DNA of 64,000 nt from Paragordius varius. Its lineage: Eukaryota > Animalia > Nematomorpha. The notes under the pieces are model-generated. The model ran no database searches and was not told the DNA's origin. It saw only the letters and a program-made list of their open reading frames with translations. Location of the stretch: assembly GCA_964247055.1 (NCBI GenBank), contig OZ176054.1, positions 2,976,001-3,040,000 on the forward strand, in the 5' to 3' direction. Below, one piece after another: positions 1,259 through 49,600 of the stretch; the stretch's first letter is position 1; each line of letters begins with the position of its first letter. The translations under genes were made by a program, and so were the position numbers.

Positions 1259-4068
<2,810 letters not shown>

Positions 4069-17515: not shown

Positions 17516-17873
17516 TGTCCTAGTATACATATTGGGGGTATATCCCAGAGCTCAATAATGTTAATAAACCACTGTTTTGAAAATAATTAATAGTTTTATG
17601 ATTTTGATTTATTAATTTAAAAAACCCATATATAATTTTTAGCACTTGGTTAATATATTTTATTTTAAACTTTGTTTGAAAGTATGTCCTGTTTCAAGTG
17701 TTGTTCAGAGCTTTTTCGTACCGATTCTCATAACGCGTTTGGGTAACCTATGGATGGATACTACCCTTAATTATATTCCCTGTTATTTGGATCAAAGAAA
17801 GCTATAAAAGATCCTAAGCCTTATTTATACAATAATTTCGCATTTTTGCCACATCATTGGGTGCGATGTGCGA

Positions 17874-18162
17874 TATACCACTTAAACTCAAATTCACCCT
17901 TCAACACTTTATATTATTTACGCTCCTTTCAGATTTTTGTAAATCAAAAATTAATTTTTAATTAAAATTAAAATAAAACAGAAAACGATAGACTATGCCA
18001 TAAAGACATATTTATATTAATAATGGTCAGGTTAGCTCAAACACACATAATTTATTTTTAGGATAAATTTGAAATGTTCGAAGGTGATGTAATGTTCAAG
18101 GGTGAAATTAAGATATTTGAGAGTGAATTTACTTAAATTAAATTTAATATGTAAATGTTATA
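17874..18162. mobile_element. MITE family C copy (left arm; mirror of 46414-46672)
   Basis: TATACCAC...GTAAATGTTATA ends; same intronic position in both arms. Confidence 0.7.
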
Positions 18163-18619
18163 TAATGGTTTTTCCAGGGTCCCATTTGTACTTTTGCAAA
18201 AAATTAAATTTTTGTAAAACTCGTTTAACGATTTTGTATAAAAAATTTATTTTTTTCCAAAGTAGAACTTGCAATTGGATCATTGTATTTAGTTTTTTTT
18301 TTAAAATACAAAAATCTTAATAAACTTTTCTCTTTTTTGATTTGCAAATATTAGTTAACATAAAAATGCACAAAAATCTCAGATAAATTTGGCTCATCTG
18401 TAAAGTGAGCAAACCTATGGTTAGCATGTCGCCACCGAATTATATTAAATTTAATTAAGGAAACTAGATAAACTAAACAAAAAGACTATAATAAAAGGCT
18501 GATTTTATAATGCCAATATATTGTAAAAATAAATTTAAAATTATTTAGGTTTTTAATTTAAGAGTTTTAAAAAAAATTTTGCCATGTCATGATTTAAATG
18601 TAATATGGTGCGAAAATGA

Positions 18620-19194
18620 ATAGCACTTGGATACAACACATTCATTTTAGTCCTTCGATTCAAAGTGGGGTAGTTTACCCCAGGCCTGTTTAAATTAAAT
18701 TCTTTAAAAAATATGGAATGAATTGAAATCATGGCAAAATTTTGCCTTTATATAACATTAATAAACCAAAATATATAAAATTTTTACAAATATACAGGAT
18801 ATAATTTATTTTAAGCTAAAACCGAAAGGTAAAAATTAAGTCAACGTAACATGTGTGCATTGATAAAATTGAAAAATAATACAAAATAAACCGCTTTTTA
18901 TATTTCTATCAATGTTAGATGTAATTTAAATAAAAAATTGGCTTTAATTTTACCCTCAAAATTAAATGAAGGCGATATTTTGCAAAAAGTTAGTAAAAGG
19001 GGCGACGAAGTAGTTTGACATGGAACTTTTTTCTCAAAACAAAATTTTATTTAGATATTTTGGCATAATATAATGTTTATCAGGATAGAAGTATAAATTT
19101 AAATTAAGACCGTTTCCTCTAATAGTTTTTTAAAAATCCTATCCTAAATTTAGTCTGGGGTATTTAGATACCCCAATTTGAATTGAAGTGTTAA
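18620..19194 (+). mobile_element. MITE family A copy 2
   Basis: CACTTGGATACAACAC...CCCCAATTTGAATTGAAGTG-TTAA; left TTAA degenerate; absent from the mirror arm. Confidence 0.85.
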
Positions 19195-20559
19195 TATGAT
19201 TGGTTATATAATATTTGACTCATATTCTCTTTCGACTAGGTTGTAAAATATTTTTTAATACTTTACACACATATGCAATTATTTATAGGAAATTATGCAA
19301 AGGCTTTTTTTTGATAGCTTGTTAAACATTCATTTCCTTTTATTGGTTTATTAAACCCAATAAGTTTTAAATCAAAATTTGCCATCATAGCTATTCAAGT
19401 AATATCAGTTTTTCTATCATTTAAAAATTAACCTTTAATAGGATCTGTTTATAGATTTTCGCAGATCTCATACTGTTGTTTCCTGAACCCTAAGGTTAGT
19501 TTTTAATATGGTCCTCTAGTTCACGAAAGCAGCGTATTATTTTCCCCAAAAATATTTTAGGCGTTTTTTTAGTTCAACCATGCTTGGCTGAACGCGGACG
19601 GAACTTTTTTAATTTTTTTAACATTAGGAAACTAGATTAATATAATTCGTAATGTATTCCTAATGTGGAAAAACATTCGAATAAGTTAGGGTATATATGT
19701 TAGCTATTTGCCCGTTGTAAGGTGTCAATAAAGTCTTATGACAAAAAATTTCGTATCCAACCCGATTTTATTAACCAATATCGTGTGTTTTCACTATTAT
19801 TATAAGTTCCATTTCCACTCACCATTATCTATTTACAACGGCTAAAAAACATCAATGGGACCGATATATAAAGATATATTCTTTCCCACATACTCCTATC
19901 GGAATATAAGATTATTTAATGAATATGTATAATTGATATTAGAGACTAGATTTAATATTCTCATAGTCTGGAATCTTAGGTATATAAAACTATTACGCAG
20001 AATCACGATTGCCCCAAATCAGCAATACCTATGACTCAGGGTTTCATTCTTATGCCTAATGTCGGATTGTCGGTTAAATCGACATCAAAAAATAATATCG
20101 CAGATTATTTTCTTTGTCTTTCTCTCCGAATTTAACCTATTCTTAGAGAGATATTTAAATTTGTGCTTAGTCGACTGCGCGTTGGCCCTCTAATACGGAA
20201 GTCTCGAAACCAACTGCCAAATCAAATATATAAATATGTATATTAAATTTGTATTCGGCGGTTTTATGTACATATTATTCAGATCTCCTTTTATCCACAA
20301 ACTAAATAACATCCAGTTAAACCATAATTTTTCTCCTAGAATAATATAATTTATTCTACTACTTCTTTTCTGCCCCTGCAACGCTCTCGCATCCGGCTAG
20401 TATTTCGGAATCCCTAATTAAAATTGAATATATTTTTTCCTATACAATATTAAAATACCCTGGTTTCTCTTAACATTTTGAATTTTAAAAAGTAGGCTTT
20501 ATGTATATCGAATTGTAACGTATTAATTTTTTAATAATTTTATACTGAAAACATGGTAC

Positions 20560-20605
<46 letters not shown>

Positions 20606-21315
20606 AAACATGGATCGCTTTATCAACAATCATTTATAGTTTTTAATATTTCAAGCTTTTATAAAATTCAAAAATTATTGAAAATTACAATTGATCTTAC
20701 AAAAATGTTTAACCCTCATCTTTGATAACAAACAAATAGTATCCTCATTCTAAATCAATGGTACTCTAACTGTGGGCCACGGACTACATTAGACCCTAAA
20801 AATGCTTTCATACGGAACTAATTATCCACTAAAGGTTGATTTCATTGTTCAATGATCGCTTAAAAATAAAATGGGTGGTAAAATTTAATTTATTTTCTTA
20901 TTTTATAATTTAGAAATATCGGAAATGTTTTTTTTTGTAATTTTCTATTTTTATTCTATATGAATTTATTTGAGAACATTTTCAGTTTTTTCATTAAAGT
21001 TATTTACAAGACACAACACATATTGAAAAAATGAATAGAAAAAACACAAACCCTTTATCGAGAAATCCTAATTATTAATGGTTGCAATTATTAATTTATG
21101 AATTTAATCAAGATCTAATCATAGATCAGTTAAAAACTGCAGTTTGTTAATTCATTATGATTTGGACGCATTAAATACATGTTAAAATTTATCGTTATCA
21201 TTATATTGATGCCTTTAAGAAGTTGCAATATTATTGTATAGTTATTGATTTTATAACTTTATACTACAGTAAATACTATCATAATTTTGTTATGACAACT
21301 AACGAATATCTAAAA

Positions 21316-21569
21316 CAGGGGTGTCCAACACAAATGGCTTCGCGGCCGCATTTTTGGACAAAAAAATCTGGTGAGCCGAATTCACAAAATATATGGATAT
21401 CAGCAATATATTAAATATAAACAAAAGATTATTAAAACTACTATTTATTTTAATAATTGTTGTTAGTTTTTTACCAAATTAGGAAGTAATTTGTTTAAAA
21501 AAATTAACTTTACTTAGATTTCGTATTTCTCGAAAGGGCCTCATGCGGGCCGCGTTTTGGCCACCCCTG
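21316..21569. mobile_element. hAT-type MITE (family E), left arm
   Basis: CAGGGGTGTCCAAC...GGCCACCCCTG with 8-bp TSD ATCTAAAA/ATCTAATA. Confidence 0.85.
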
Positions 21570-22657
21570 ATCTAATATTACCAATAATAAATACAACACA
21601 TAATAAATATTTTTTTAGAATATAATTGTATATTTTTGAAATATTTTGTCCCTATTTATACGGATGGTTGTCTATCTTATATTGGAATCACTAATAGACT
21701 TACCTTTTTTATAAAAATTATCTGCGAAACCTTTTGTCCTTTTATTGTATAGAAACATAGTTGCGTGCCTTTAATATGAGTTCAATTCGGTAATTGAAAC
21801 GGTTGATGACATTAACGTCAATCGGTTAGAGAATTTAAACATCGTATCAAAATCTAAAATAAATTATATAAGTATTACTAAGGCAATAAATTTAATACAA
21901 ATCTTCCAGTTAACAAAACAACATTAATCATATATTTTCGCGAGAAAAATTAATATTAAAAGGAAATTTTATTTATTCATTAATTTTCCATTTAAACGAC
22001 TCATGAAGAATATATTGAAATCACTATAATAATAGGTAATTTTCATGCAAGGTGCTCACAAAAAAATATTCTGAAACATATTTATTGAGATAGGAAAATG
22101 AAGCAGGAATATCATGGGGCTTTTGGTTTTGGCTCTTACGAGTGATATATGAAAGTTATTTCCACTTTTGTGGTAACTTGTTCCATATCAGAAAATAATT
22201 TGGGCACACTTTGTTAAATTTTTTGGGTTAAAGCTAAATTCTACATTCCAAAAAATATCACTAAAATATATAAGAAACCACATACACAAAGAAAAACAAT
22301 TTTTTATAAATTTTTAATTTTTATATGTGGGCCGAAAGTCCCAAATTTTTAAACTCGTTCAAAATGTGCGAATTCTTTTAAAATAAAAACAAATTCCCAA
22401 GATTGTGCGGTAAAAATTTTAAATATATGCTAAATTTTGACATCAAAAAGGTTTTTCCGAAAAAATGGATTATTTGCTTAAAAATCTAATTTATAGCAAA
22501 ATTTTGTCAAAGCGTACTTCATACTATCTTGAGGTATGGTGGAAACGGTATAAAAAGGATTTAAAATATTATAAAAGCACTTATTCCATATAATTTGATG
22601 ATGTCGAACATTTCTATCACCTCAGAAATATGATTAAAAAATATTTCAAAATTATTG

Positions 22658-23217
22658 TTAACACTTGGATACAGCACACTCATTTTAGTCCTTCGATTCA
22701 AATTGGGGTAGTTGGATACCCCAGGCCTTAAAATCAAATATTTTATAAAGTATGGAAGAAATCGAAACCATGGCAAAACTGTACACTATAACATTAATAA
22801 ACCGAAATAAAAAAAATTATTCAAAAATACTTGTTATTACTTATTTTAAAACCAAAAGGTAATTTCGTCAACCAGACATGGGTGAAATGGTAATATTAAA
22901 TAATACAAAATAAACCGCTTTTTCCTTTTCTATCAATGTGAGATGTAATTTAAATAAAAAATTAGCTTAAATTTTACCCTTAAAATTAAGATTATATTTT
23001 GCAAAAATTTTGTAAACTAACAATGGCGTCGAAGTAGTTTGACATGGACCTTTTTTTTCAAAACAAAATAAAGATATTTTGGCATTATTTATATATTTTT
23101 TATCAGGAGATAAGCATAAATTTAAATTGGAACCGTTGCCTTTAGTAGTTTTTTAAAAATATTAGTTTAAATTTAGTCTGGGGTATTTAGATACCCCAAT
23201 TTGAATCAAAGTGTTAA
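22658..23217 (+). mobile_element. MITE family A copy 3
   Basis: TTAA at both ends and full consensus termini; sits at the apex of a local tail-to-tail palindrome. Confidence 0.9.
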
Positions 23218-26039
23218 ATAAAATTGTTTTTTTTAACTCAAATTAAGCAAACGAACCTTTAGATCAAAACACAAAAGAGATTGAAATGTTCGGCATCATC
23301 ACTGATATTTTAAAGCGTTTTTATACCGTTTCCATGAAAAGGAAACACTTTTAATATATTTTTAGTTTATGTTAATGTTGGCATATAATTAACATTCTTG
23401 TCGCGCATCGGCATTTTTGCGTTATATTAAGAGAACTAGCCTATTTTGGAATAGGGAAATAGTTTGGGTCTTCCCAATCTAAAAATTTAAATTTTACAAA
23501 AATATTGTTTTGCTTCTTATATGTGATTGATATATTTTGATATTTTTTGGAATTAAGCATTTAACTATAATCTAAAAACTTTATTTTTGTCATATTCTGA
23601 TATGGAGCAGATGGCACAAAAGTGTAAATAACTTTCTCCGATCGTTTCTAAGGGCCATAACCAAAAACCCCATAACAATCCTGATACATTTTCTCATCAC
23701 AATATACAAATTTCATCATATATTTTGTATATGTAAAGATACAGCCAACGAAATGTATAATCAACCATACAACTTTTTCTTAAATTTTGCGGTGTAAGGG
23801 GTAGAGTTGAATAATTGATTATGCTGAATATTTTGATTGACTTAACCCTTTTTTGATGGTGTTTTACAATAAAACATCAAGTGATGCTCACCAAATTGAT
23901 TTGACGGGCCATTGATATATTTTTAAGGGCCGTACGCCACATTATTTCAAAATTGTATGGTTTTTTCCAGGCATGCATATATTTTTACACTAAATCAGTA
24001 TGAGATTTTCTGAGGTTCGCATATTCTTCATAGCTAAAATGCTTCTTGTCCTATAAAGTTTGAATAATATAAATATTTTGATTGTAAAATTTATTATTAA
24101 TCATGTAATTGGATATATTTAAATATAAACTATTATAATTAAACTATTAAGTCTAATCACTACATGCATAACTTAATACGTCATTTATACGGACTATCAA
24201 GCGATCTTAAATGGAATTTCGTTTATGAATGCGCTAAGTCGTATGTTTAAGTTGAGGAAAAATAAAAATAACTTTCCCACTTAAACGACTCATGAAGAAA
24301 ATATGAAAGTTACTGATGGAATCAACCCAATATTAATGATTTGTATCTGACGAAATAAAACTTAGAATTCAGGATTTATGAAATAACGTTGAAAATTCAT
24401 GGCTAATGAACATACCAAATATGAAGCAACATGTGCAATTCGTTGATTATATCGATTTCAAAAATTATTTTAATTTGTATGCTATATAGTAACCGAAAAA
24501 CAAATGGTATTTCGAGTTTTGGCAGGATGCGAAATAAATGTGTAAATGTAATATAATAGTATCAAGGTATTCTTGCTCTTTTACCAGAACCCACACCTGC
24601 TAATCGGCCCATTCATAAACGAATTTCCATTAAAAAATCGCTTGATAGACCATATGAAGACAAGATTGATTTGTCATATATGATATGAGATTGGTTATTT
24701 ATACATTTAACTAATGGCACCAAAAGACCATTATCTGGAAAATAATGCGACCTTTAAAAAATCTATTGATTTAGTGTATGAATATCTCGGTGTTAGACAA
24801 AGAGCTATGCAATTTCTGGAATTATGCGGTGCACGGCCCTAAGATAATAAAATATATTAGTTAGCTTTAAAATAATTTGGTGACCACTGATGTAGGTTAT
24901 GTTGTAAATCAGCATAAAAAAGTGGTTTAACACACTAAGCATTAATCAACCATTCAACTTTGCTCCTTATATCGAAAAATTTGACCAGCAGAAGTTGAAT
25001 GGTTATTTGGTGATAAAATCAATTTGTTATCTCATTAAAATTTGTAGAGTAACAACTTTAATTATATTGAATATTAATTAAAAATTAAATTAAAGGAAAC
25101 TAGTCAATTTACCGATACTATTGATCGCATAATTTATTGGTATAAGGAGTAAAGTTGAATGGCTGATTAATGATGAACTCAATTTGCTATCTGTTCAAAC
25201 AAAGCATTGAAAACAGTAATCAAAGGAATGTTATTATATTGAGCATCGCTAACTATTAAGTTAAATAAATTCGATTGATGCAGATTCTCTTGACCGCCAC
25301 AATTTCTCGGAGAAAAGAATGGTTGATTTACGCTGAATATGTTAACTGTTTGAACCCCTTTTTAATGCTGTTTTACAAACATAATTTACATCTGGCGCTC
25401 ACCACATTATTTCAATTAAATATTTCTTGTCTTAGGGGTGTACCAGATAATCTCCAAATTCCCTAGGTCTTTTTTAAGCGCGTAGTACGCCGAAATCTTT
25501 TGATTTTCGCATATATTTTATCAGGTAAAATGTCTCTTTTGCCATTTAGTTTGATAAATATAAATATTTTGATTTTATTATCAAACACACCTATTCTAGT
25601 ATTAAACCTTATTATTAAACCAGCTTGGTTTAACATCATGACAAGCCAATCTTAATCAAAATCCATATCGGGTTTCATAAGCTCTAAGTAGAATTCCTTT
25701 ATGAATATGCCTACTCGCATGCGTGAATTGAAGGAAAACAGTAGAAATAACTCTATTCATGAATTCTCACTTAAAATTACTCATGAAAAAAATATAGAAA
25801 ATAATGGAATTGACCCAATACTAGGAATTTATGAAATGGAATTTAGAATCCAGGATTTAAGAAATAACTTTAAAATTCATGGCTCATATACATGCCAAAT
25901 ATGATAACAAGTGCAATCGCCTTTATCTATGGATATCTTGTTAAAAAATTCATCGATCTGAAAATATTTTAATTTTGAATTTTATAAAACCGCTAACAAG
26001 AATGGTGTATTGAGTTTTGGCAAGATAAGTCAAATAAAT

Positions 26040-27025
26040 ATGAAAACATATGTTATTTCTATTGTTTTCCGTCAATTTCCACATGCAAGTCGGCATATTT
26101 ATGAATGAATTTCCATTTAGAGATCGCCCAATACCCCATATAAATGACCTATTAAGATTAGACTGAGAGGATGTTAAATCATGTTATAGCTAATAAATCT
26201 TAAAATTAAAATATTTATATTTATCAATTTAAACGACACAAGACACATTTTAACTGTGAATTATATTCAATCCTCAAATTCCGGTGTACTCATATCTTAA
26301 ATATCTGCGTGCTTGACAGAGTTATCGAATTATGCGATGCACGGCCCTAAAAATAAAAAATATTTTAGTGGGCCCGTTGAATTAATTTGGTGAGCACCAC
26401 TGAGCTAAACTATGTTATATTATAAGGCATAAAAAAGGGGTGTAATTATTTAAAATCAGCATTATCAACCATTCAACTTTACCTCTTATACCAAGAAATT
26501 GGGGTGTTCAACAGTATTATCGAGTTTCCTTCAACTTGATTGTCAATGATATTCAATACAATTACACTCAACCTTGTGATTTTAAGGCTGCTTCCGAAAT
26601 CGGGATGTATAAATATCCTAATGAAATATTATTCTAATAGGAAAATTTATCAAGATATAATGTGGCATTTGGTTTGGGCACTTACAAGTTAGGAAGTTTT
26701 TTACACTTTAAGGTAAGTACGCCATATCAAAAAATGGCGGCGCACATGTTCATTAATGCTTCATTCCATAAAATATCACTAAAATATATTATGAATTACA
26801 TATAAAGAGCAAAACAATACTTTTGTAAAATTTTAATACTTTTAGATTTGGGCTCCAAAAGTCCCAAATTTTTTGCCATTCTAACATGGGCCAGTGCTTC
26901 ATTGAACGCAAAAATGCCGACCGAGATTATGCGATAATTTTATATATACTGGCATCAAAAAAAAGTTTTTATCGAAAAAATGAATTATTTGCCAAAATAT
27001 TAGCAAACTTTTGTTAAGGCATACC
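26040..27025 (+). pseudogene. Representative copy of the unidentified array gene (micro-intron gene, disabled)
   Basis: Peptide motifs conserved across copies: MNEFPFRDR (26101-26127), ELCDARP (~26333), INHSTL, YNVAFGLGTY, ERKNADRDYA (26904-); GT-AG segment of 21 nt at 26825-26845; stops and frameshifts present. Confidence 0.6.
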
Positions 27026-27289
27026 TAAGGTGACCAGACGTCCCGCTTTTTCACACTTTGTCCCGCGTCCCGCTACGTTTTTATAATGTCCCGCTTTTTC
27101 ACGATTATTTTAAAAAAAAATTTTTTAATACAAATAAATATCCGTTTAAATTTTTTATCATTAAATATCTTTAAAATCTATTGAATTTTAAATTAAAACT
27201 TTTTATTTTTAAATTAAAAATATTTATTTCGAATTTATATCATATGATTATACACTTTGCTTCCTACTATTATTGTCATCATTATCAAA

Positions 27290-27575
27290 AAGCCAAGTTA
27301 ATACCACAAATCTCTAGATTTAAAGACAAATTAATACCACAAATCGGTAGCTTAAAAGACAAATTGATACCACAAATCGGTACCTTACACGTTTATTTCA
27401 GAAATTTAAGGTAATATAATATTTATTATACTAATATTTTAGTTTATTACTTGCCAACATTATTAAAAAGCTAAATTAATACCACAAATCAGTAGCTTAA
27501 AAGACAAATTGATACCACAAATCGGTACCTTACACGTTTATTCCAGAAAATTAAGGTAATATAATATTTATTATA
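27290..27575. repeat. 33-bp subterminal tandem repeats inside the hAT element
   Basis: AAATT(A/G)ATACCACAAATC(G/A)GTAGCTTAAAAGAC units in two clusters produced by a larger local duplication. Confidence 0.8.
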
Positions 27576-36442: not shown

Positions 36443-36879
36443 ATATAACTCTTGATAAAATATGTATATTGTGATGGGAAAATATATTAGGATTATCATG
36501 GGGCTTTTGCTTATGTCCCTTTGGAACGACTGGAGTTATTTACCCTTTTGTGGCATGTGCTCTAATATGACAAAATTTGCTCACATTTTTTTAATAAACC
36601 TTTTTGGTAATGGCTAAATGCTTAATTCCAACAAATATCACTAAAATTAATCATGAACTACACATAAGAAGCAAAACAATATTTTTATAAAATTTAAATT
36701 TTTAGATGTGGGCTCCGAAAGCCCCAAAATATTTCACTATTTCAAAATGGGCTAATTCTCTTATTATGAACGCAAAAACGCCGATGACAAGAATGTTAAA
36801 TATATGCCAACCTTAACATAAACTAAAAATATAAAAAAATGTTTCTTTTTTTCAAAAATTTAATATTAAAAAAAATTTT

Positions 36880-38905: not shown

Positions 38906-39146
38906 TTAATAAAATATATTTTAGGTGATTTCGATACAATGTCTAAATTCTCTAACCGGTACTAAAATGAACTCATATTAAAAGCGCGACACTATGTTTT
39001 GAAAACAATGAAAGGATAGAAATTTTTGTAGATTATATTTTTTATTGAAAAAATAAGTCTATTATTGATTCCAATTTACCATTTGCATAAATAGGGACCA
39101 ATTATATCAAATATAGTGGTATTTTTCATTGGTAATAATTTTAGAT

Positions 39147-39384
39147 CAGGGGTGGCCACGTGGCCCGCATATACAAAATTTTATGATCAAAGTAAGTTAT
39201 TCTTTTATAACATATTTTCTTAATTATTTCCAAATTTGGCAAAAAAACTAGCAAAAAATATTAAAATTAATAGTAATTTTTACAATCTTATGGTTAAATT
39301 TAATAAAATATTTGTAAACTCAAATATTTTGTTAGTGCGGCCCACCAAATGCCACCGCGAAGCCATTTGTGTTGGACACCTCTG
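39147..39384. mobile_element. hAT-type MITE (family E), right arm, mirror of 21316-21569
   Basis: CAGGGGTGGCC...GGACACCTCTG with perfect 8-bp TSD TTTTAGAT. Confidence 0.88.
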
Positions 39385-39799
39385 TTTTAGATACTCGTTA
39401 ATTGTCATTACGAAATCTGAATAGTTTTTACTGTGGTATGAAATTATGAAATCAATAACTATACAAAAATATTGCAGTTAAAAGTGATAATATACTGAAA
39501 CGATAAATTTTGCCATGTGTTTAATGCATTCAGGTCATGTTAAATTAGTAAGCCAAAGTTTTTAACTGATCAATGATTTTATCTTGATTATTGAATTCAT
39601 AAATTACAAATTGGAACCAATCTATTCATTTTTTAATATGTGTTGTGTATTATAAAAAACTTTGATGAAAAAACGGAAAAATGTTCTCAAATAAATTCAT
39701 AAAGTGTAAAAATATTACCAACCGATATTACTAAAACATTAAATAATAAATCATGGAAATCAATTAGTTTTTACCACCCATTTGTATTTTTAAGCAACC

Positions 39800-41425
39800 A
39801 TTGAACAATGAAATCAACCTTTAGTGGATATTTCGGGCAATTCGAAAGCACTTTTAGGGCGGCATGTGGTCCATCGTGGTTTGAGTACCATTGATTTTGA
39901 TTGAGAATATACATTTTGTCTAATTCTTTTCTTTATCAAATATGAAGTGTCAACGTTTTTGTTTATATTAAATTGTAATTTTAAGTAATTTTTGAATTTT
40001 GTAAAAGATTAAAAGCATTAAAAACTGTAAATGATTGTTGGTAAAGCGATTCTATATTTATTTATCTATTATGTATATAGAGATGTGGTAAATAAGATGC
40101 ACCATGTTATTAATATAAAATTATTAAAATAAAACCTACGCTTCAAATTTCAAAACTTATAGAAAAGAGGCTATTTTAATAATGAATAAGAAAATTTACT
40201 ATTTAGAATTTTAGTAAATAGGGATACCAAAATACCAGCCGGAGCATTGCAGAGGTAGGAAAATGGTGGACTATTTAATTTGCATTAGAAAAATATAAAA
40301 TATTTTTTTCTGGTAAAAAATTTGTGGTTTAACTGGAAATCTTAATTTAGCTTGTGGCTATAAAGGAAATCGAATAATATGTGTAGTATACCGCCGATTA
40401 TAATAATATACATTTATAGATTTGAAAACTTTGGCAGTTTGTTTCGAGTTCGTATTAAGGGGCAAGCGCGCAGTTGTCGACTAAGCACAAATTTAAAATA
40501 TCTGTCTAAGAATAGGTTAAATACGAAGAGAAAAAATTACTCCTAGATATGATTTTTTGATGTCGATTAAAGCGACATAAAGGATGGTCGCTCCTCTTTT
40601 ATCGGATATTAGGCAAAAGAATTAAACTCTGAATCGTGTGGATTGGCTAAATTGGGGCAACATGTTATTAATGTCATGGATTTGCGCAATCACAGTTTTG
40701 CATACCGAACATTCCAGGTTATGAAAAAATTATGTTAAATCCAGAGGCTTAGCTTGCATTTCTAGCGCCCGGAGCATGAAACCGTGATGGGGCTCCCTCC
40801 ACTCCATGCGACCCCTTGCATTTTAAAAAATAAACAAATTTAAACAGTGGTCATGGCTGCTCATATATGGATGATTTTTTTATGTATTATTTAAAATAAT
40901 AACTTTTAAATACCTATTTTTTAAAATAAAATTAAAAAATGCATCCCTTTCCCTCTCTACGCCCCTGGTTAAATCTTGTCTATATTCGGAAAGGGGGTAT
41001 ATGGAGAAGAACAAAACTTTAAGTCCATTGATGTTTTTTGCTTGGCCGTTGTCGATATTAGATACATGTGAGTAGAAGTGAAACTGATGCTATTACTCAA
41101 TTGGATAATAGTTGCCTTCAATACGGATTTCCTTGCATATTGCATAAAATGCAAATTTTACAAAGACTTTAAGGATACCACACAACTGCCAATACTAAAC
41201 ATGTCCAACATTCGCAAACAAATGGGTTATTCGAACATTTTTTCACCTTCATATTATAAATTGCTATCTGATTTAAGTTACCTACGGCTAAAACAATTAA
41301 ACAAGTCCTTTATTGTTCAGGCTAGCATAGTGCCATCAAAGAATGACCATCTAAAATATTTTTGCCGAAAAATATTAATTTGTTCCTTTCACGGGCAGGA
41401 CCACATACTTGCAACCAATCGATAA
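39800..41425 (+). other. Candidate exons of an unidentified gene or pseudogene (mirror remnant at ~19490-20900, minus strand)
   Basis: GC-richer blocks conserved between arms with splice-like borders (tttatag|40419, CAG|gttatg ~40717, |gtgagt at ~41068 in both arms) and a 115-codon ORF at 41078-41425. Frames cannot be joined unambiguously. Confidence 0.3.
40742..40967. mobile_element. hAT-type MITE (family F), right arm only
   Basis: CAGAGGC...GCCCCTG termini with perfect 8-bp TSD GTTAAATC; absent from the left arm. Confidence 0.85.
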
Positions 41426-42206
41426 CGACAGTAAAATTCTAAATTCGAATGAAAATGTATACGTTCGGAATTGTCTGGACCAGAACTATCACACACCAGG
41501 AGCCAAGCAATCAAAAAACCAATCAAACCCAGACAGATATCTTAATATTGATTATATTTATTCAATGAAATAGTAGTTTTTATGTTATATTTATACAACT
41601 ATATCAACATAAATCAGTCAAACTTTAACCACTAATTTATTAAGGCCATAATCAAGTAGAAATATGGAACTTGTAATTGTTTTTCAAGCCGCTAATAGGT
41701 TCTTATACTATATTATATTTATATGTATTCATTTTTAATTTACCTTATGAAGTTTGATGCCTACTATTATACATGAGTTTATTAAAAATATTCCGAAAAA
41801 GCTGTAGCCATAAAGCAGTGACACTCAACCGCGGCACTAAAAGACCTTTTTTATGACCTTAATTTCTCCAAACTTTATTTAATTTTTTTATTGCTAAATT
41901 TTATTGATTTCGATATTTTTTTATATTATTCAAAAAATAAACGGCTTTGATATTTTTTAATTATAGTAAATTACTATTGATCCCATTAAAAGATATTGAT
42001 TTTTTAAAAAGAATTACCGGCTATCTACGAAAGTTATACATAGCACTCCTTAAACTTACACACGCGGGCTGCATAAAACATGAAATATGTTAAAAATATT
42101 TATAGAAATCGCTTGAAACATTTCCATATGGGCGACATATTTAAATTGAGTATCATGATGCTGAACCAGATTCAACAACAATTGTTGGAAATTTCATACC
42201 AGCATT

Positions 42207-42604
42207 TATACCGTTTACATTGAACGAATCAAATTCACCCTTAAACAATTCAAATTCATCCTTCAATTCAAATTCATCCTGGAACAATTCAAATTCACCT
42301 AAAAGTAAATTATGTGTTTTCGGGCAGCTAATATAACTCATTATTAATATGAAATATAACTTTATGGAATAGTTTATTGTTTTTTCAGCATTATATTAAT
42401 TTTAAAACAGAATATTTTAAAAATATTATAATATAAAGGTAATTTTTAATCTTAAAAAATACATAATTTATTTTAGGGTGAATTTGAATTGTTTTGAGGG
42501 TGAAATTGAATTGTTCAAGGGTGAATTTTAATTGTTCCAGGGTGAATTCGAATTGTTTAAGGGTGAATTTGAATTGTTCGAGGGTGAATTTGAACTGATG
42601 GTAT
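42207..42604. mobile_element. MITE family C copy with expanded subterminal repeats
   Basis: TATACCGTTTAC...GATGGTATA; tandem GGGTGAATTTGAATTGTTC units. Confidence 0.78.
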
Positions 42605-43665
42605 ATATACGGCCCGAATCTCGGTGTACTAATTTGGGTATATATATCTGCATATGTTTAAAAGAGCTGTATGTTATTATGCGCGGCCCTTAAGACAAAG
42701 AAATTATTTATTCGGCCTGTCAAACTTTTTTGGTGAGTATCACTGCCATAGATGGTCCAACACACAGCTAATGGACGTTTAAACATAATACGAAAAAAAG
42801 TTAATTTCGTTCATAATTATTTTAAGTAATTAATACAATAATTATCAGCACTCTTAAGTATAAAAGTGGAATCTTTTAATGTTTTTCGCTGGCTCATAGG
42901 TACCTCCTATAATTTAATAATATTATATATCATTATTTATGTATAGGAATTGCTAATCATCACAGTGATTGAGTTTTGTGTAGTGTGTGGGTGTATTTAG
43001 ATAATATATAATATTATAGATTAGGTGAGAAAACTACTGTCACAATGAATATATAAAAAGTGGTTTTTTCAAAAAAGGATGCCTTCTAACATTAACTTTC
43101 CACCATTTTAAATCGGTTTGGCAGAGTGTTGTTATTAATTAACAAATATTTGATTGCGTGTATATAAACTATAGTGATAGACTGACTAGTCGTGTGATGA
43201 TGACACCTGCAAAAATTTAATGTAAAGCGTTTGTTTTAACATAAGTCATTCACATGATTAATAAAACGGAAAAGGAAAAAACTACCCTAATAAAAAATAT
43301 AAAAATAAAAATGAATGAAAAAGCGTATAAACAATACTGTACTTTGTTGTGTAACTATCCAAACAATAAGTTTGGTTTAAATCAATTATGATATACATGA
43401 TTTTGAATTGTCCCAAGTTTGACACACAATTTAAAAAATATAAGTCAAAAATTTGAGCAAACCAACCCAAGAATAATAACTTAACAAGTGTGCTTGCGTA
43501 TTTAATATTTTTAAATATGGATAGTAGAGAATTATAAAATCATTGCATTATCTCTTGATTGAGTATGACATTATTTGCTATTAAACTTAACATTTTTCAA
43601 ATGTGTCTGTTTATACCATTTTTATCAACTGCTAACGGCATTCGAAATACAAGATTAATACAGTA

Positions 43666-46600
43666 TCAACTTTTGTGATTTAGCGAATGTAGGGAACCAT
43701 CTATAAACCTTAAAGAAGCTATTTCTAAACCACTCGTGAAAACATCATCGATACCATCAATAAAATTTGCCGACGGTACATTTTGCAATTCTTTAACATG
43801 CTCAGGAACAATAGATGTTACGACAATTTGATTATTGTTTGACGATTCAGCATTTTCAATCCTATTCTGGTGTCCACGTTTTTCAGATGTTAAATTATCT
43901 TCAAACTTTTCAACACCCGTTTGGTCAAAGCCTTCTGTTTCATCAATCTTTTTACACAATGGTAATTCATTACAGTCCTCTCTTGAGCCAGGTATAAACG
44001 TCATAGAAACTTCTGGATCCTGAAGCGATTTTTCGGTTTTCAAACTGTAATTGCTAGAAATATTGCCATTAAGATTGTAGGGAGTAAAGAGGGGTGGTAG
44101 ACCACGCATAAACCAAATCTTAACACGGTCAACCATATCTTGAAGTGAGGTAGCCAAGTTGTGTAAATGTCGGGTGGATAGGGATCTCGGAATTTCCGTT
44201 GCAGTTTTATAAAGCGATCGTTTCTTATTATTGATATTTTTCGTGCTATTGTTATGATCAGCCAAAGTTGAATTTATATTATGATCACTATTGTTGTGAT
44301 TAAGAGAGTTTGATAAGTAATTTTTACCTTCACCATAAATTAGTGAAGATGGATGGTTATTGCGCTCTTTACCATTCATCAGGAGTCTGTAGAAAAGAGT
44401 ATTATTATTATTATTTCTATGAGCATTAGTACCAATCTTATTCACGGACGAGATTGCATGGCCATAATTATTTTGATTATGGCTAACGTTGAAAGATTTT
44501 GGGGTATTTAATTTGAAGGGGAGCAAAGGTTCTCCGCTACTTTTTCGCCGTCCATCAAACACGGGTCCTTTTTTAGCACGCAATGTCAAAAAATAATTTA
44601 GTGGCCAAATCGTGCGATTTTGCGGGCTAGGTTTCGGAGAAGCTTTATAAGAATTGTTAGAAGAGAATGAGATACAGTTATTATCACTCTTGTGAAGCAA
44701 AGTACTTCTTTCATATTTTCCAGTTACGTCGTAATCAACATTATTACAAACGCCATGGCTAGTCTCGTCAGATAGTTTCACCGCATTAAAACCCAAATCT
44801 TCCTCGATGGAATCGAGTTTAGGTCGATGATTTGGAATATAATTGACTAGAATATTATTATTATTATTATTGTTATCGACAAAGTTGCCGGCGGCAGCAG
44901 CAGGATTTACAGTTTCACTAAAACTATTTCCATTTCCAGCTGTCGCAGTCCCGATAACCCACGACCCGCCAATTATATCAAAGAGACCGGCCGTTTGTTT
45001 AGCCGCTGCAAAAGCATTGGCTATTGAGGAGAGGGGCGTTAAAATGGATGAACGGTTTGAACCTATGCTCCGATGATGCAGACGATTCCTTCGCCAAATA
45101 TTGTATTGAGCGTATATGGCTTCACGTACCTAATGAGCAAAGTGTAAGATTTTAGCAAAACTCAAATCTCAGGTTATATTAGTGAAAAAAATAAGGCTTT
45201 AAAAAGAGTTAAAACTTACATCGGGATTCAGGAAACAACAGTAGAGCGATATGCAAAAGCCCTATAAGAAAAATAGATGATTATGATTAGTATAATGAAA
45301 AATAAGGATTGAAACCGAACGCTTTTTGTTTCATTTTAAAACTCTGATAATTTTACACTTTGTGAATAAATAAAAAATGGGAGTAATGACATTCGAATTT
45401 ACATATACTTATTTCGAACCACAAAAATATATAATGTTTTTTTGAAACTATATAATTCGAAAAAGTGAGTTTGGTTAACCGATTCCAGTAATTCTCGTTC
45501 CACAAAAACTGTTTCTGTGTGAAAAAATAATGATATTTACATACTTGAGTAGCTATGATGGCGCATTGTATAATTTGAAACGTTCTATTGGGTTTAATAT
45601 ACCAATAATGGAATATGCCCAACAGGCTGATAAGAAAGAAAAAGCCTTTGCACGATTTTCTATAAATAATTGTATATGTGTATAAAGTATTGAAAAATTT
45701 AAAATATTTTACAACCTAGTTTAAAAAGCATATCTGTACCATATTAATATAAATATATAGGTAAAATAATTCAATTATACATCTAAATCTAAAACCAGCA
45801 TCATCTTAAATAAAGCAATCATTATCACAATATCAAATTGACAAACAAACCAAATTAAACAACTTTTATCATTTTTTTCAATAAGTATTCTCCTTTTGTC
45901 GCTTGATTGTAAAAATATTTTAACCATAATACTTAATATTATTCATCATAATGTAATTACGAAAGCTTATTTGTTTAATATGTACCCTAATTTCCTTTAC
46001 CATAAATTGGTTTTATATAGAAATGAAGTCAAGTTAATATGTTGTGAAAAAATATTTACCGTCCAGTGGCGACATGAGAACAATATGTTTGCACAACTTT
46101 ACATATAACAGCTATCATAACAGCCAAATTTATCTATAATATATAAAAAATATTCAATAATCTTGATAAAAATATTTATACATTCTTTATTGTTATCAAA
46201 AATTTGCAATTTAAAAAAAGAGAAAAATTTATATCAAGATTTTCGTATTCAAAAGAGTAATAGCTAAAAAATACCCCAACAATAATCATCCATATGATTG
46301 CCAATTCCACGTTGACAAAGATAACTTTTCTATACAAAAAATCGTGAAAAAATGTTTTACAAAAATTTATTTATTTATTTACAAAAGTATAAAGGAACCT
46401 TGGAGAACCATTATATACCATTTATACCTTAAATTCACTATTGAATACTTTCACCCTTGAACATTACATCACCTTTGAACATTTCAAATTCACCCAAAAA
46501 ATAAATTATGTGTATTTAAGCTAATCTAACCATTAATAATAAAAATAATAGCATAATTTATCGTTTTCTTCTATATTAGGTTAAACATTTCAAATTTTTG

Positions 46601-49600
46601 ATATACAAAAATTAAAATGTTTAAGGGTAAATTTAAAATGTTAAAGGGTGAATTTGAGGTGTAAATGGTATATCGCACCCAATTATGTGGTATAAAAAGC
46701 GTATTAATTATTTAATATAAATAAGGCTTATACGATCTTTTATATCCTTCTTTAATGATCCAATTAATGGTAAATCCACCGACTATAATAAAGGGTAGAA
46801 TCCATCCAATAGTTACCCAAACGCGTAATGGGTATCGGTGAGAAAAGGCTCTGAACAATACTTGAAACAAGAGCAAGCTTTCACACAGCATCCAAAAGTA
46901 AATGGACGTGTTAAAGTAGTAATAGGCAATAGAAAATATATTGTCCAGATACTAAAAAAGACAATATAAAAAAAGGAGTTATATATGGGTATATTTTCAA
47001 AGCAAAACCATAAAATTAAGGAAACAGCCATATGATTTTTTATTACCATTGTGTGATTACAATCGTTAATATATAATAATTGAAATAGTAAAATGAAGTT
47101 CTAAAGCGTTTTAGTTTTCACGTTTTGTTATTATAATTCCAATTTTCACTTTATAAATTCATCTTAATCTTTTTGAATAAACATTTTATGATGGATTCAA
47201 AAATGGTTACTAGTAAAATACTATGAAATTATCTTTGTGGATTAGAAAAACAACATATATATACGTATAAAATTGAAAATCGGGGTATCTCCTCGTGAAG
47301 TTTTTTGTACAGTATCTCGTATTTCAACTTTTTAAAAGTGTTTTGAGCCTCCAAAATCGATTTGGTGTCATTGGTATAATTAATTTGTAGAGTTTGATTA
47401 TGGATAGTAGTTGAAACATTTTCAGTAGTTGCAAAGCTAGTATTATTTTTAAAAATGCTATTATTCGCCTGATATGGCTTCTGAAATTGTAAGGAGGATT
47501 GTTGTTGAGTCATCTTTATCTGATCCTTGATGGCTAAAATTTTGTCCATGTTAAGTTTGGTGTGATTTTGTCGCAAAGTTTTTATGTGTTGCAAAGATAA
47601 CCAGACCACAATGTAAAAAATAAAGGATAGAATGAGATGGCAATGAATAGTGTTCCGTAAACATTTGAGCGTCCTACATTAATTATTATTACATGGAAGA
47701 AATGACAAATACATTTTACACCTTATATTCACACAAAAATAAATTAAACGTTTTAAAGATTAAAAATTACTTACCTATATTTTTGATATTGTTAAATATG
47801 AAATTTTGTTTAACACTTGGATACAACACATTCATTTTAGTCCTTCGATTCAACGGTAGTTAAATACCCCAGACGTGTTTAAAATTAAATTATTAAAAAA
47901 ATATGGAAGGAATCAAAACCATGGCAAAATTTTGCATTTATATGACATTAATAAACCGAAATATATACTTGATATTACTTATTTTAAGCTAAAACACAAA
48001 GGTAAAAATTTAGTTAACGTAACATGTGTGCAATGGTAATTGAAAAATAATACAAAATAACCCGCTTTTTCTATTTCTATCAATGTTAGATGTAATTTAT
48101 ATAAAAAATTAGCTTTAGTTTTACCCTAAAAATTAAATAAAGACGATATTTTGCAAAAATTTTGTAAAATAAAAATAGCGTCGAAGTAGTTTGAGATGGA
48201 ACTTTTTTTTCAAAAAAAATTTTATTAAGATATTTTGGCATATATCTATAATATTTATCAGGATAGAAGCATCAATTTAAATTGGGACCGTTTCCTTCAG
48301 TAGTTTTTTAAAAATATAAATTTAAATTTAATCTGGGGTATTTAGATACCCCAATTTGAATCGAAGTGTTAAACTTAAATAATACGGAAAAAATAATAAA
48401 TTATGCCATAAAGAAAAAATTCATATTGATGATGAGTTATGTTAGCCTGAAAACACATAATTTATTGTTAGGGTTAATTGTTCAAGGGTAAATTTTACAT
48501 GTAAAAGCTAAAAATAAATTTGTTTTCAATGATATGCACTACACAAGTAGGAAAAGAGGGCATTTCCCCCCACTACACCAAAAAAATGGCAAACGCCCAC
48601 GATTTTAAGATTAAGAAACATGAATTATCTATCTAATATTGTATAAAAAATTCAAAAAATTCTCTTAAGGGATTAAATACCATGTAAAAACGTAATCTTC
48701 AAATAAAAATCATGTATGCCAGTGATTAATGCATCAAAACTATAAAAAACTTCAAGATTGATAATGTATATTAAACATAATATATGATACAGCCGCAAAA
48801 TGTTTGAAAAAAATTTCCAATATACTTTTTTGCATGCAACTTATTTCAATACGTTGCGTAACATTTAAGCACTATTAGCTACGTTTTAAATCCTAATTAC
48901 ATTACATTAGTTAATGGTTAAAACAGTAATTTCTATAAGTTTAAAATATAACTAATTTACCGTAGATTTTTTAGCAGCAAATAAGCTATGATAAGGGATA
49001 CCAAGGAGAGGCTAAATCCAATTCGATATGTCAACACATACTAAATTTAGATATGCAAATTAAAAATATATGATTCAATAAAAAAGTTTATTCACATGTG
49101 GATTCAGAAATTAATATAAAGGATATTTTGCCAAAATTTGGTTCCGATTTCATATTTTTGGTCACAAAAAATTATATTAAAATAATGATAATACAAAGAT
49201 ACATAACAATAGAAAATGTTTGTATGCTATTTTTCTTTAAAAATTTTAAAATGTATAGAATTAGGAACAATTTCAAATCTTACTGACCTTTTCTCTTTCC
49301 GAATTGGATTATTATATAACAGAGCTTAATCTTGTAAATAAAGTATTATTTTGAAGGTTTTTCTAGTTAAAATTTAATTATCTAGATTCTTTTCCTGTAT
49401 TAGAATAAAAAGCTTATATTTTTACAGTTTTGCGACTTCTAGATCTTAAATTAGGACAACTCTATAATACGATTAAACTATAATCAATAAATATCAAGTT
49501 TAAAATGTAAACCTTAAAGCCTAGTAAAGTTAATTATTTACCTTTTATAACCATAATATACATTTATATACCTGTTACAATAGCGATTCAAAAAAAATTA

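What the first reader, a model, noticed from the sequence alone, without database searches (positions are those of the whole stretch)
17550..47060. A ~29.5-kb nested palindrome: mirrors within mirrors
Seen: an outer inverted duplication contains an inner array whose every junction is itself a local symmetry axis (~22.9, 24.4, 25.1, 25.9, 27.0/30.6, 31.6, 32.4, 33.05 kb). Inference: repeated fold-back events (a head-to-head pair duplicated, then the whole block mirrored) of the kind produced by template-switch inverted amplification, breakage-fusion-bridge or rolling-hairpin-like replication. Any read-through transcript would form kb-long dsRNA, so the locus is a candidate hairpin/siRNA source or a gene-conversion-maintained amplicon.
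Basis: partly seen in the sequence, partly recalled or inferred. Interest (0 to 1): 0.85.

Follow-up and report, generated by a model that had tools for sequence, protein, structure and literature searches.

The report
Fold-back duplication centred on a hairpin transposon
A real 29-kb mirror-image stretch of non-coding DNA in a very AT-rich animal genome is most simply explained by two rounds of fold-back copying that started at a hairpin-shaped transposon, with more transposons landing in it later; it is a clear natural example of a known kind of DNA rearrangement, not a new system.

Summary
Mirror homology runs collinearly from 17657 to 46903.

1. The "3.7-kb spacer" is a later hAT transposon insertion (27026-30441, perfect 8-bp target duplication). 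Without it the arms meet at about 30575-30584.
2. That axis is the centre of an ordinary ~1.1-kb foldback transposon (V3-loop-V4). A second copy (V1-loop-V2) lies at 22.1-23.7 kb with the same asymmetric loop.
3. The arms have two ages: mismatch rate 0.187 outside 21.8 kb and 0.089 inside 23.3 kb, with one sharp step.
4. The inner array is eight copies of a low-copy, non-coding ~650-bp unit. A tree gives the order: inverted pair, then tandem duplication of the pair, then mirroring.

The right arm contains exons of a class B GPCR gene. The left arm holds a decayed copy of one exon, so the left arm carries the decayed copy and is probably derived.

Best explanation: two hairpin-primed fold-back duplications nucleated on foldback transposons. 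The arms differ by 8-19%, so they are not maintained by conversion. No RNA data were available. This is a new member of a known kind, of moderate interest. The scan had noted foldback transposons in this genome before, but not this mechanism at this scale.

The parts
17657..21870 (+). Left outer arm (older age class): blocks O1 17657-18377, O2 19204-19413, O3 19506-19919, O4 19953-21870. It is low copy in the genome.
   Evidence: Searches give the collinear mirror matches. One search gives a summed contig depth of 540-1300 against a single-contig depth of 230-510. Searches give a mismatch rate of about 0.18-0.19.
17680..17832 (+). Decayed pseudo-exon copy of the GPCR TM3-TM4 exon, with two in-frame stops and 9-nt and 3-nt deletions. 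The mirror homology begins inside this exon.
   Evidence: alignment and translation; the right-arm original matches Pfam 7tm_2.
18617..19194 (+). MITE 'D' copy, present in the left arm only (later insertion).
22064..23726 (+). TE1: foldback transposon V1(+)-loop-V2(-). A MITE D (22662-23213) is nested at a TTAA in its centre (TTAA at 22658-22661 and 23214-23217).
   Evidence: One search shows V depth of 35,000-200,000 and D depth of 1.4-2.5 million, with sharp D ends at 22658 and 23217.
23764..26569 (.). Left U array: a1(+) 23764-24383, a2(-) 24386-25003, b1(+) 25226-25897, b2(-) 25900-26569. It is non-coding and low copy.
   Evidence: tree; no codon periodicity; depth 620-4500.
26611..27025 (+). 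V3, the left arm of foldback transposon TE2, interrupted by the hAT. It resumes at 30450-30574.
27026..30441 (+). hAT transposon remnant, a later insertion into V3. It has an 8-bp TSD GGCATACC (27018-27025 and 30442-30449), TIR TAAGGTGACCAGA matching 13/15, broken transposase ORFs and an internal fold-back with axis about 29415.
   Evidence: TSD, TIR, and the empty site in the right arm; ZBED5/DUF4371-like features; Dimer_Tnp_hAT, E=9.6e-6.
30450..31106 (.). Rest of V3 (30450-30574), the asymmetric loop and true symmetry axis (about 30538-30625, axis about 30575-30584), and V4(-) to 31106.
   Evidence: One search shows the loop motif GCAAACGAA only at 23247 and 30594, both on the + strand, and a hairpin z-score of -6.4.
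31159..33701 (.). Right U array: b2x(+) 31159-31575 (about 250 bp deleted), b1x(-) 31585-32255, a2x(+) 32492-33083, a1x(-) 33093-33701.
33757..36437 (.). Foldback (FB-like) transposon with 21-bp arrays TTTCCCAGTCAATCAAAACGT in both orientations and termini CCATTTCCCAGTC / CTCTTTCCCAGTC at a TA-rich target. It is a later insertion in the right arm only.
   Evidence: the empty site is preserved in the left arm near 23714.
36439..36890 (+). V5, the mirror partner of V2 and the outer end of the younger inner mirror.
36885..38913 (+). Right-arm-only segment: a 5'-truncated LTR-retrotransposon pol fragment (RNase H, integrase), without LTRs detected. It sits exactly at the step between the two age classes.
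38913..41406 (-). Right outer arm, blocks O4' and O3'.
41407..45524 (.). Right-arm-only 4.1 kb: a small foldback element (42196-42604) and the long last-exon piece of the GPCR gene (43669-45129, minus strand).
45525..46903 (-). Right outer arm, blocks O2' (45525-45752) and O1' (46172-46903). It lies inside the GPCR gene and includes most of the intact TM3-TM4 exon (46715-46951, minus strand).
   Evidence: (7tm_2, E=1.6e-7).

Best explanation
The locus records two successive hairpin-primed (fold-back) inverted duplications, nucleated on copies of a ~1.1-kb foldback transposon family (V-loop-V), followed by ordinary transposon insertions.

Starting material: an old non-coding array of four ~650-bp units (alpha> <beta, alpha> <beta). 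It arose by an inverted duplication and then a tandem duplication of the pair, and it was flanked by two V-V elements, TE1 and TE2, in the same orientation.

Older event: about 4-8 kb from the GPCR side, including part of the gene's TM3-TM4 exon, was copied in inverted orientation to the far side, giving the outer arms.

Younger event: single-stranded DNA exposed at a break folded back on the two arms of TE2. The 3' end was extended along the neighbouring array up to the centre of TE1. The new strand was joined to the other broken end, where a truncated retrotransposon fragment now sits. The TE2 loop stayed single-copy at the axis.

Two sub-models fit.
- Sub-model A: both events used the TE2 axis, and the inner right arm was re-copied later.
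- Sub-model B: the first fold-back paired V1 with V4 (a large loop), and the second paired V3 with V4 (a small loop). B needs no extra deletion.

Later insertions: a hAT element landed 135 bp from the axis and created the apparent spacer; an FB element landed in the right arm; MITEs landed in the left arm.

Shown: the anatomy, the insertion signatures, the position of the axis on TE2, the two age classes, and the left arm as the decayed, probably derived copy. Inferred: hairpin priming itself and the break positions.
For: (1) Removing the hAT, which has a perfect 8-bp TSD, 13/15 TIR and an empty site in the other arm, gives a continuous self-inverted alignment of 1215 bp at 88% through the centre.
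(2) TE2 (V3-loop-V4) aligns with TE1 (V1-loop-V2) better in direct than in inverted orientation (323 against 262 overall; centre 82.7% against 71.9%). The loop motif GCAAACGAA occurs only twice in 64 kb, right of centre in each element and on the same strand. So TE2 is a normal family member, not a by-product of the mirroring.
(3) V is a dispersed family (about 75-450 times single-copy depth), while the U units and outer blocks are low copy.
(4) TE2's arms are 87% alike, like the inner arms. TE1's arms are only 73% alike.
(5) There is a single change point in mismatch rate, 0.187 against 0.089 (delta logL 39), placed at TE1 in the left arm and at the pol fragment in the right arm.
(6) The right arm has no V1 partner.
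(7) A pseudo-exon of the GPCR lies at the left outer end.
(8) Both V-V centres fold as strong hairpins (z = -6.4 and -9.4).
(9) The mechanism is established elsewhere: fold-back with a single-copy spacer flanked by short inverted sequences in humans (PMC3907307), and long-stem hairpins giving foldback inversions even when distal to the break in yeast (PMC7467729).
Against: No intermediate, pre-duplication allele or outgroup locus was seen, so hairpin priming is inferred from the end product only. Sub-models A and B cannot be separated. The V pairs are somewhat more diverged (0.12) than the U units (0.08, p=0.02), which neither sub-model predicts exactly. The preference for direct over inverted alignment of TE1 and TE2 is moderate outside the central ~220 nt. 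The pol fragment could be a decayed ordinary insertion rather than filler at a repair joint. No reads were laid across the central axis.
Confidence: 0.68

Rival explanations
1. One inverted duplication only. Later, long-tract arm-to-arm gene conversion homogenised the inner 3.7 kb, with no second break-and-fold-back event, and the absence of V1' in the right arm is an unrelated deletion.
For: Two age classes with a sharp step where arm homology is interrupted. Conversion between palindrome arms is well known (for example PMC3723533, listed; I read only the start of its abstract), and earlier notes report it for this genome.
Against: It needs an extra ~0.9-kb deletion plus the pol fragment exactly at the tract end. 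It is hard to separate from sub-model A of the best explanation, with which it largely overlaps.
Confidence: 0.15
2. A replication-based template switch (FoSTeS/MMBIR or origin-dependent inverted-repeat amplification) at stalled forks, without fold-back of a broken end. The foldback transposons act only as fork barriers and switch sites.
For: The structure is interstitial and needs two junctions. Inverted repeats are used as switch points in the ODIRA model (PMC4689423). The product would look much the same.
Against: As described in the abstract of PMC4689423, ODIRA yields interstitial inverted triplications, whereas only two copies are present here. The product does not discriminate between these mechanisms otherwise.
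Confidence: 0.1
3. The inner array is a family of about 9 protein-coding micro-intron genes in alternating orientation (earlier first-stage note s1-285149), and the palindrome is a head-to-head gene cluster.
For: Conserved blocks exist among the ~60-65% identical units. Short open pieces exist in some copies.
Against: There is no 3-base periodicity of substitutions between arms (lag-3 ratio 0.50) or among deep paralogs (p=0.8). Only 25% of indels are multiples of 3. The longest ORF (101 aa, 31714-32019) is broken in its 88%-identical partner. There is no Pfam hit. Recent changes are not depleted in conserved columns.
Confidence: 0.03
4. The whole 29.5 kb, or the inner 13 kb, is one giant foldback or composite transposon with very long terminal inverted repeats.
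For: This genome is rich in foldback transposons. V elements sit at the arm ends.
Against: The arms are low copy. The outer end lies inside a host exon with no TSD or family terminus. The sharp V termini face the array, so V1-V2 and V3-V4 are the mobile units.
Confidence: 0.03
5. Aberrant hAT transposition (sister-chromatid or reversed-ends transposition, or an unopened donor hairpin) made the inverted duplication.
For: A hAT element lies almost at the centre and itself carries an internal fold-back.
Against: The hAT has a perfect 8-bp TSD and both TIRs, which marks a simple insertion. It lies 135 bp off the axis, is in one arm only, and the other arm keeps the empty site.
Confidence: 0.02

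Closest known systems
Fold-back inverted duplications with a single-copy spacer (human constitutional inv-dup rearrangements, Hermetz et al. 2014, PMC3907307; yeast foldback inversions, Li et al. 2020, PMC7467729)
   Same: Two inverted arms flank a short single-copy loop that is bounded by inverted sequences able to pair within one strand. A second junction stabilises the product. A long-stem hairpin-forming sequence acts as the nucleation site.
   Different: Here the product is interstitial, fixed in a germline genome, old (8-19% arm divergence) and apparently two-staged. The nucleating hairpin is a ~1.1-kb foldback transposon rather than a few bases of microhomology. There is no terminal deletion or dicentric history to be seen.
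Foldback transposons (Drosophila FB, Galileo) as agents of rearrangement (PMC2775673, PMC3573991)
   Same: Long-armed hairpin-shaped DNA transposons sit at rearrangement breakpoints. Several such families are present in this locus.
   Different: From the title and the start of the abstract listed (PMC2775673, not read in full), Galileo generates inversions by ectopic recombination between copies. Here the element's own two arms appear to have primed a duplication, and the result is a palindrome, not an inversion.
Large sex-chromosome palindromes maintained by arm-to-arm gene conversion (human Y P1-P8, X palindromes; PMC3723533, PMC8327919)
   Same: Kilobase-scale inverted arms around a short spacer, with evidence here for one episode in which the inner arms were made alike again.
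   Different: Arm identity here is 81-92%, not above 99.9%. No intact gene is duplicated in the arms, sex linkage is unknown, and there is no sign of continuing conversion.
Inverted-duplication hairpin RNA loci (plant proto-MIRNA genes, endo-siRNA hairpins; PMC3237417)
   Same: An inverted duplication of part of a gene (the GPCR exon copy) could in principle give RNA complementary to the parent gene.
   Different: No transcript or small RNA was seen. The exon copy is 29 kb from its parent, decayed, and in an orientation in which its + strand reads sense, not antisense, to the GPCR.

Membership tests
Fold-back (hairpin-primed) inverted duplication | Two collinear arms in inverted orientation, specific to the locus | tested here: met
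   Searches show the collinear mirror blocks. One search shows the outer blocks and U units are low copy.
Fold-back (hairpin-primed) inverted duplication | A short single-copy loop at the axis, bounded by sequences that can pair within one strand | tested here: met
   An ~88-nt asymmetric loop (about 30538-30625) lies between GATGCCGAACATT and its complement, inside a pre-existing V-V foldback element.
Fold-back (hairpin-primed) inverted duplication | A second junction joining the end of the copied tract to unrelated DNA | tested here: inconclusive
   The outer homology ends inside the GPCR exon copy at about 17650-17680, next to the GNAT upstream region and an (AT)31 run. The inner step ends at a pol fragment. 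Without an ancestral allele the joints cannot be read base by base.
Fold-back (hairpin-primed) inverted duplication | A broken-end or hairpin intermediate | not testable with these tools
   Only the old end product is available.
Breakage-fusion-bridge amplification | Stepwise copy-number ladder, repeated spacer-less inverted junctions, terminal deletion | tested here: not met
   There are two copies only, the structure is interstitial between intact genes (GNAT at 16752-17369 and the GPCR), and there is one axis per age class.
Conversion-maintained ampliconic palindrome | Near-identical arms (above 99%) kept alike by continuing gene conversion | tested here: not met
   The mismatch rate is 0.08-0.19, with many arm-specific indels and insertions.
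Giant foldback or composite transposon | Family termini and a target-site duplication at the outer ends, with several genomic copies of the whole unit | tested here: not met
   The outer end lies inside a host exon copy and no TSD is present. The arms are low copy.
Alternating protein-coding gene family | A conserved reading frame and codon-patterned substitutions | tested here: not met
   Searches show no periodicity, frame-breaking indels and ORFs that are not conserved between 88-90% identical partners. One search gives no Pfam hit.
Hairpin RNA / siRNA source locus | A transcript spanning both arms and 20-30-nt small RNAs from both strands | not testable with these tools
   No RNA run holds the stretch, and the single read-laying run was used on DNA contigs.
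hAT superfamily transposon (central insertion 27026-30441) | An 8-bp target-site duplication, short TIRs and a transposase with the hAT C-terminal dimerisation domain | tested here: met
   The TSD is GGCATACC and the TIR matches 13/15. Dimer_Tnp_hAT scores E=9.6e-6, above the gathering score. The ORF has ZBED5/DUF4371-like features. The ORFs are broken, so the copy is dead.
FB-like foldback family of this genome (TA|CCATTT termini, 21-bp arrays) | A CCATTT terminus at a TA target and subterminal arrays of 21-bp units in inverted orientation | tested here: met
   This applies to 33757-36437. One end is CCATTTCCCAGTC, the other is CTCTTTCCCAGTC, the target is TA-rich, and there are 21-bp arrays on both sides. 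The family definition comes from earlier unchecked notes.

The most novel reading that the evidence does not exclude
The locus is one symptom of a lineage-wide tendency of this (probably hairworm) genome to turn hairpin-forming DNA into fold-back duplications at every scale. The other symptoms would be perfect coding palindromes in the mitochondrial genes (published for the phylum, PMC6649704), hAT and Tc1 elements that carry inverted copies of their own genes (earlier notes), and kilobase nested palindromes such as this one. A weakened or lost hairpin-processing pathway (Mre11-Rad50/Sae2-CtIP-type activities, which suppress small-loop foldback inversions in yeast, PMC7467729) could be the cause. 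If so, foldback transposons would be a main engine of segmental duplication in this phylum.
Probability: 0.15. Interest if true: 0.75.

Novelty: new member of a known kind. Interest (0 to 1): 0.4.

Why it matters
Fold-back inverted duplications are mostly known from patients, tumours and yeast assays, where the nucleating inverted sequence is only a few bases long or was engineered. Here a fixed germline example keeps its whole history legible. The nucleating element is a natural foldback transposon whose family-specific asymmetric loop survives at the axis. A second copy of the element marks the edge of the younger tract. A host gene fragment caught at the outer end identifies the left arm as the decayed, probably derived copy. 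This gives natural support for the idea that hairpin-shaped transposons seed palindromic segmental duplications. It also offers a template for asking how common this is in a genome that earlier notes describe as full of such elements. The result also corrects two attractive over-readings: the locus is not a conversion-maintained amplicon, and the array is not a hidden gene family.

Tried and rejected
1. Chance or composition artefact. Rejected: block-wise dinucleotide shuffles give at most 64 bits, against 85-700 bits observed.
2. Gene family. Rejected by the periodicity, indel, ORF-conservation and constraint tests.
3. Known RNA genes in the arms. None found at the gathering score or at E<=1.
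4. The divergence difference as an alignment artefact. Rejected: it persists at sites at least 8 nt from any gap in ungapped blocks of at least 30 nt, and at both G/C and A/T sites.
5. Selection on U as the cause of its low divergence. No support.
6. hAT-mediated origin. Rejected because the TSD is intact and the other arm keeps the empty site.
7. Copy number from raw reads. Not possible, because only Logan contigs were served. Summed contig depth was used as a rough guide only.
8. Looking up the neighbouring GNAT protein in public assemblies to get the organism and other copies of the locus. Not on record.
9. Searching earlier findings by sequence for U, V and D. Blank.
10. A first folding script timed out. 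It was repeated on 400-nt centres with RNA energy parameters, not DNA parameters.

Full report
**Context.** The window is very AT-rich (23-33% G+C). Earlier notes of this scan describe it as an animal genome with 22-28-nt micro-introns and many foldback transposons, probably a horsehair worm. I did not verify the species. A look-up of the neighbouring GNAT protein found nothing on record.

**Observation.**
- An exact-seed repeat search and a sensitive self-BLAST show mirror homology that is collinear from 17657 to 46903, in seven blocks.
- Ten shuffles that preserve local dinucleotide content never gave more than 64 bits. The local palindromes score 85-700 bits and the main arms 670-2179 bits.
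- The nested symmetry is therefore real.

**The inner array.**
- nhmmer with half-units finds eight copies of one ~620-670-bp unit U in strict alternation. On the left are a1+ 23764-24383, a2- 24386-25003, b1+ 25226-25897 and b2- 25900-26569. On the right are b2x+ 31159-31575, b1x- 31585-32255, a2x+ 32492-33083 and a1x- 33093-33701.
- Mirror partners are 80-90% identical. All other pairs are 60-66% identical.
- A maximum-likelihood tree groups (a1,a1x) with (b1,b1x) and (a2,a2x) with (b2,b2x). Support is 92/95 for the deep split and 100/100 for the partner pairs. Pre-mirror branches are about 0.18 long, and most terminal branches are about 0.04-0.08, with b2x at 0.14.
- The order of events is therefore: U was duplicated in inverted orientation (alpha> <beta), the pair was soon duplicated in tandem, and much later the block was mirrored.

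**The array is not a gene family.** An earlier first-stage note reads it as a micro-intron gene family. My tests do not support this.
- Substitutions between arms show no period of three (lag-3 to other ratio 0.50).
- Only 19 of 76 indels are multiples of three, and most are 1-2 nt.
- Conservation among the deep paralogs has no period-3 power (p=0.8).
- ORF-piece matches occur on both strands and in several frames. The longest ORF (101 aa) is split in its 88%-identical partner.
- Pfam and Rfam find nothing.

**Which parts are mobile.**
- Only assembled contigs of public runs were available, so depth is a rough guide.
- With single contigs at depth 230-510 in run X1, the summed depth at 80% likeness was as follows:

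| Segment | Summed depth |
|---|---|
| Outer block | 540-1,300 |
| U | 620-4,500 |
| V1/V2 | 35,000-200,000 |
| D | 1.4-2.5 million |

- Hundreds of contigs end exactly at 22658 and 23217.
- D is a ~552-bp MITE with TTAA duplications (TTAA|CACTTGG...CGAAGTG|TTAA).
- V is a ~480-570-bp dispersed family present five times here: V1+ 22064-22657, V2- 23218-23726, V3+ 26611-27025 plus 30450-30574, V4- 30575-31106 and V5+ 36439-36890.
- U and the outer blocks are essentially specific to this locus. This rules out a chance arrangement of dispersed repeats for the large mirror.

**The centre.**
- A search for terminal inverted repeats with 8-bp duplications found one outstanding candidate at 27026-30441. 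It has the TSD GGCATACC on both sides and the termini TAAGGTGACCAGA (13 of 15 matching).
- Its ORFs look like ZBED5/DUF4371-type hAT transposase and include the hAT dimerisation domain (E=9.6e-6). They are broken, and the element carries its own internal fold-back (axis about 29415).
- The right arm preserves the uninterrupted site.
- Deleting the element and one TSD copy in silico joins the arms into one self-inverted alignment of 1215 bp at 88%, with the axis at about 30575-30584.
- The "3.7-kb spacer" is thus a later insertion into the left arm, 135 bp from the axis.

**The axis lies on a foldback transposon.**
- With D removed from V1...V2 (TE1) and the hAT removed from V3...V4 (TE2), the two elements align over about 1030 bp. 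The direct alignment is better than the inverted one (score 323 against 262). The difference is clearest over the central 220 nt (82.7% against 71.9%).
- The centre is asymmetric in both. The motif GCAAACGAA occurs only twice in the 64-kb window, at 23247 and 30594. Each lies just right of the element's centre, both are on the + strand, and there is none on the - strand.
- TE2 is therefore an ordinary copy of the family, with its family-typical loop. If V4 had been produced by mirroring V3, the right side of the centre would mirror the left side instead.
- Both centres fold as strong single-strand hairpins (z = -6.4 and -9.4, RNA parameters).
- TE2's arms are 87% alike, like the surrounding inner arms. 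TE1's arms are 73% alike. This is expected if one TE2 arm was partly re-synthesised or corrected when the hairpin primed copying.

**Two age classes.**
- K2P distances between partners are 0.16-0.26 for the outer blocks, 0.14 for the V pairs and 0.08-0.12 for the U units.
- At strictly well-aligned sites the rates are 0.183, 0.120 and 0.082 (outer against U, p=3e-13). The difference holds at both G/C and A/T sites.
- A likelihood scan finds one step, 0.187 against 0.089 (delta logL 39). It lies between 21.8 and 23.3 kb, that is, at TE1.
- Recent changes in U are not depleted in columns conserved among deep paralogs, so selection on U is not the cause.
- In the right arm the step coincides with a 2-kb segment absent from the left arm: a 5'-truncated retrotransposon pol fragment (RT_RNaseH_2 E=1.7e-20; integrase zinc domain). 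The right arm has no partner of V1.

**Direction.**
- The minus-strand piece 46715-46951 matches the secretin-family 7TM profile (E=1.6e-7, above the gathering score). The piece 47232-47678 matches weakly.
- So the right outer arm lies inside a class B GPCR gene, as another first-stage note had suggested.
- The mirror homology starts inside that exon. The left arm carries a copy at about 17680-17832 with two in-frame stops and two small deletions.
- The right arm therefore keeps the intact gene and the left outer arm holds the truncated, decayed copy. This makes the left arm the probable derived copy, although it does not by itself prove which arm was newly synthesised.
- The 4.1 kb holding the gene's long last-exon piece (43669-45129) has no counterpart in the left arm.

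**Other arm-specific insertions.**
- The 2.7-kb element at 33757-36437 has CCATTTCCCAGTC / CTCTTTCCCAGTC termini at a TA-rich target and 21-bp arrays in both orientations. The left arm keeps the empty site. It belongs to the foldback family described in earlier notes.
- A D copy at about 18617-19194 is present only in the left arm.

**Mechanism.**
- The end product has the hallmarks of fold-back inverted duplication: inverted arms around a short single-copy loop bounded by sequences that can pair within one strand (PMC3907307). Long-stem hairpin-forming sequences can do this even when far from the break (PMC7467729).
- I infer that the younger event was a fold-back on TE2, with synthesis running through the U array to the centre of TE1.
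- The older event was either a fold-back on the same axis whose inner half was later re-copied (sub-model A), or a large-loop fold-back pairing V1 with V4 (sub-model B). B explains the missing V1 partner without a deletion.
- These steps are inference. The anatomy, the insertion signatures and the age step are shown.

**What is not supported.**
- Breakage-fusion-bridge or rolling-hairpin amplification: there are only two copies and the structure is interstitial.
- A conversion-maintained amplicon: arm divergence is 8-19%.
- hAT-mediated origin: the insertion is intact and off-axis.
- A giant transposon: the arms are low copy and the outer end lies in an exon.
- An assembly artefact: the arms are diverged, the insertions are arm-specific, and X1 contigs match exactly across 21490-22148, 23306-23873 and 24789-25161. 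X1 may be the source sample, and the axis itself was not covered.
- The dsRNA/siRNA idea remains untested, because no RNA run holds the stretch.

**Verdict.** The locus is real and well resolved, and it is explained by known processes. The notable points are that a natural foldback transposon sits exactly at the axis with its loop intact, and that a second copy bounds the younger tract. In the papers I searched I found mitochondrial palindromes described for hairworms (PMC6649704), but nothing on nuclear fold-back duplications in the phylum.

Noticed in passing
window 13576-14099: A perfect 212-bp inverted repeat (100% complementary) with a 100-nt loop. This is far cleaner than anything in the studied locus. 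An earlier first-stage note calls it a pair of mirror hammerhead ribozymes, but Rfam found no family at the gathering score anywhere in the window.
   Followed up: no
window 4904-5409, 18617-19194, 22662-23213, 47810-48372, 50827-51408, 55554-56119, 63305-63618: All seven copies of the TTAA-flanked MITE 'D' in the window lie on the + strand, although they are independent insertions with different flanks. Summed contig depth suggests thousands of copies genome-wide. The orientation bias is unexplained.
   Followed up: partly
window 21301-21500 (partner 39222-39416): A ~200-bp segment inside the otherwise low-copy outer block has about 150 times the single-copy contig depth. It is a short high-copy element that was already present when the outer arms were duplicated.
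   Followed up: partly
window 42196-42604 and 15107-15709: Small foldback elements built from 21-bp units (AGGGTGAATTTGAATTGTTCA and AAGGACCAACTTGAATTGTTC) in both orientations. They are further flavours of the 21-bp-array foldback family.
   Followed up: no
window 19501-25500 in runs X3 (organism B) and X5 (organism C): Runs filed under two other organism labels hold short contigs identical to this locus at depth 2-5. This would fit the animal being present inside another sampled organism (for example a host), or mislabelling.
   Followed up: no
window 19501-25500 in run X4 (same species label, other sample): Contigs of a second sample with the same species label match this locus only at about 88-95% with many gaps. 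This suggests deep population divergence or a cryptic species, unless they are the other arm's copies.
   Followed up: no
window 27919-30300: The dead hAT element carries an inverted, condensed copy of its own transposase region (axis about 29415; matching blocks 28214-28438 with 30223-30034, 28773-28938 with 29929-29777, and 29055-29775 self-inverted). Earlier notes report the same architecture for other hAT copies in this genome.
   Followed up: partly
window 43669-53189, minus strand: The class B GPCR gene next to and inside the right arm has very long low-complexity N-rich open pieces (487 aa and 266 aa) with no Pfam match. I did not locate TM5-TM7 among pieces of at least 28 aa between 45.1 and 46.7 kb.
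   Followed up: partly
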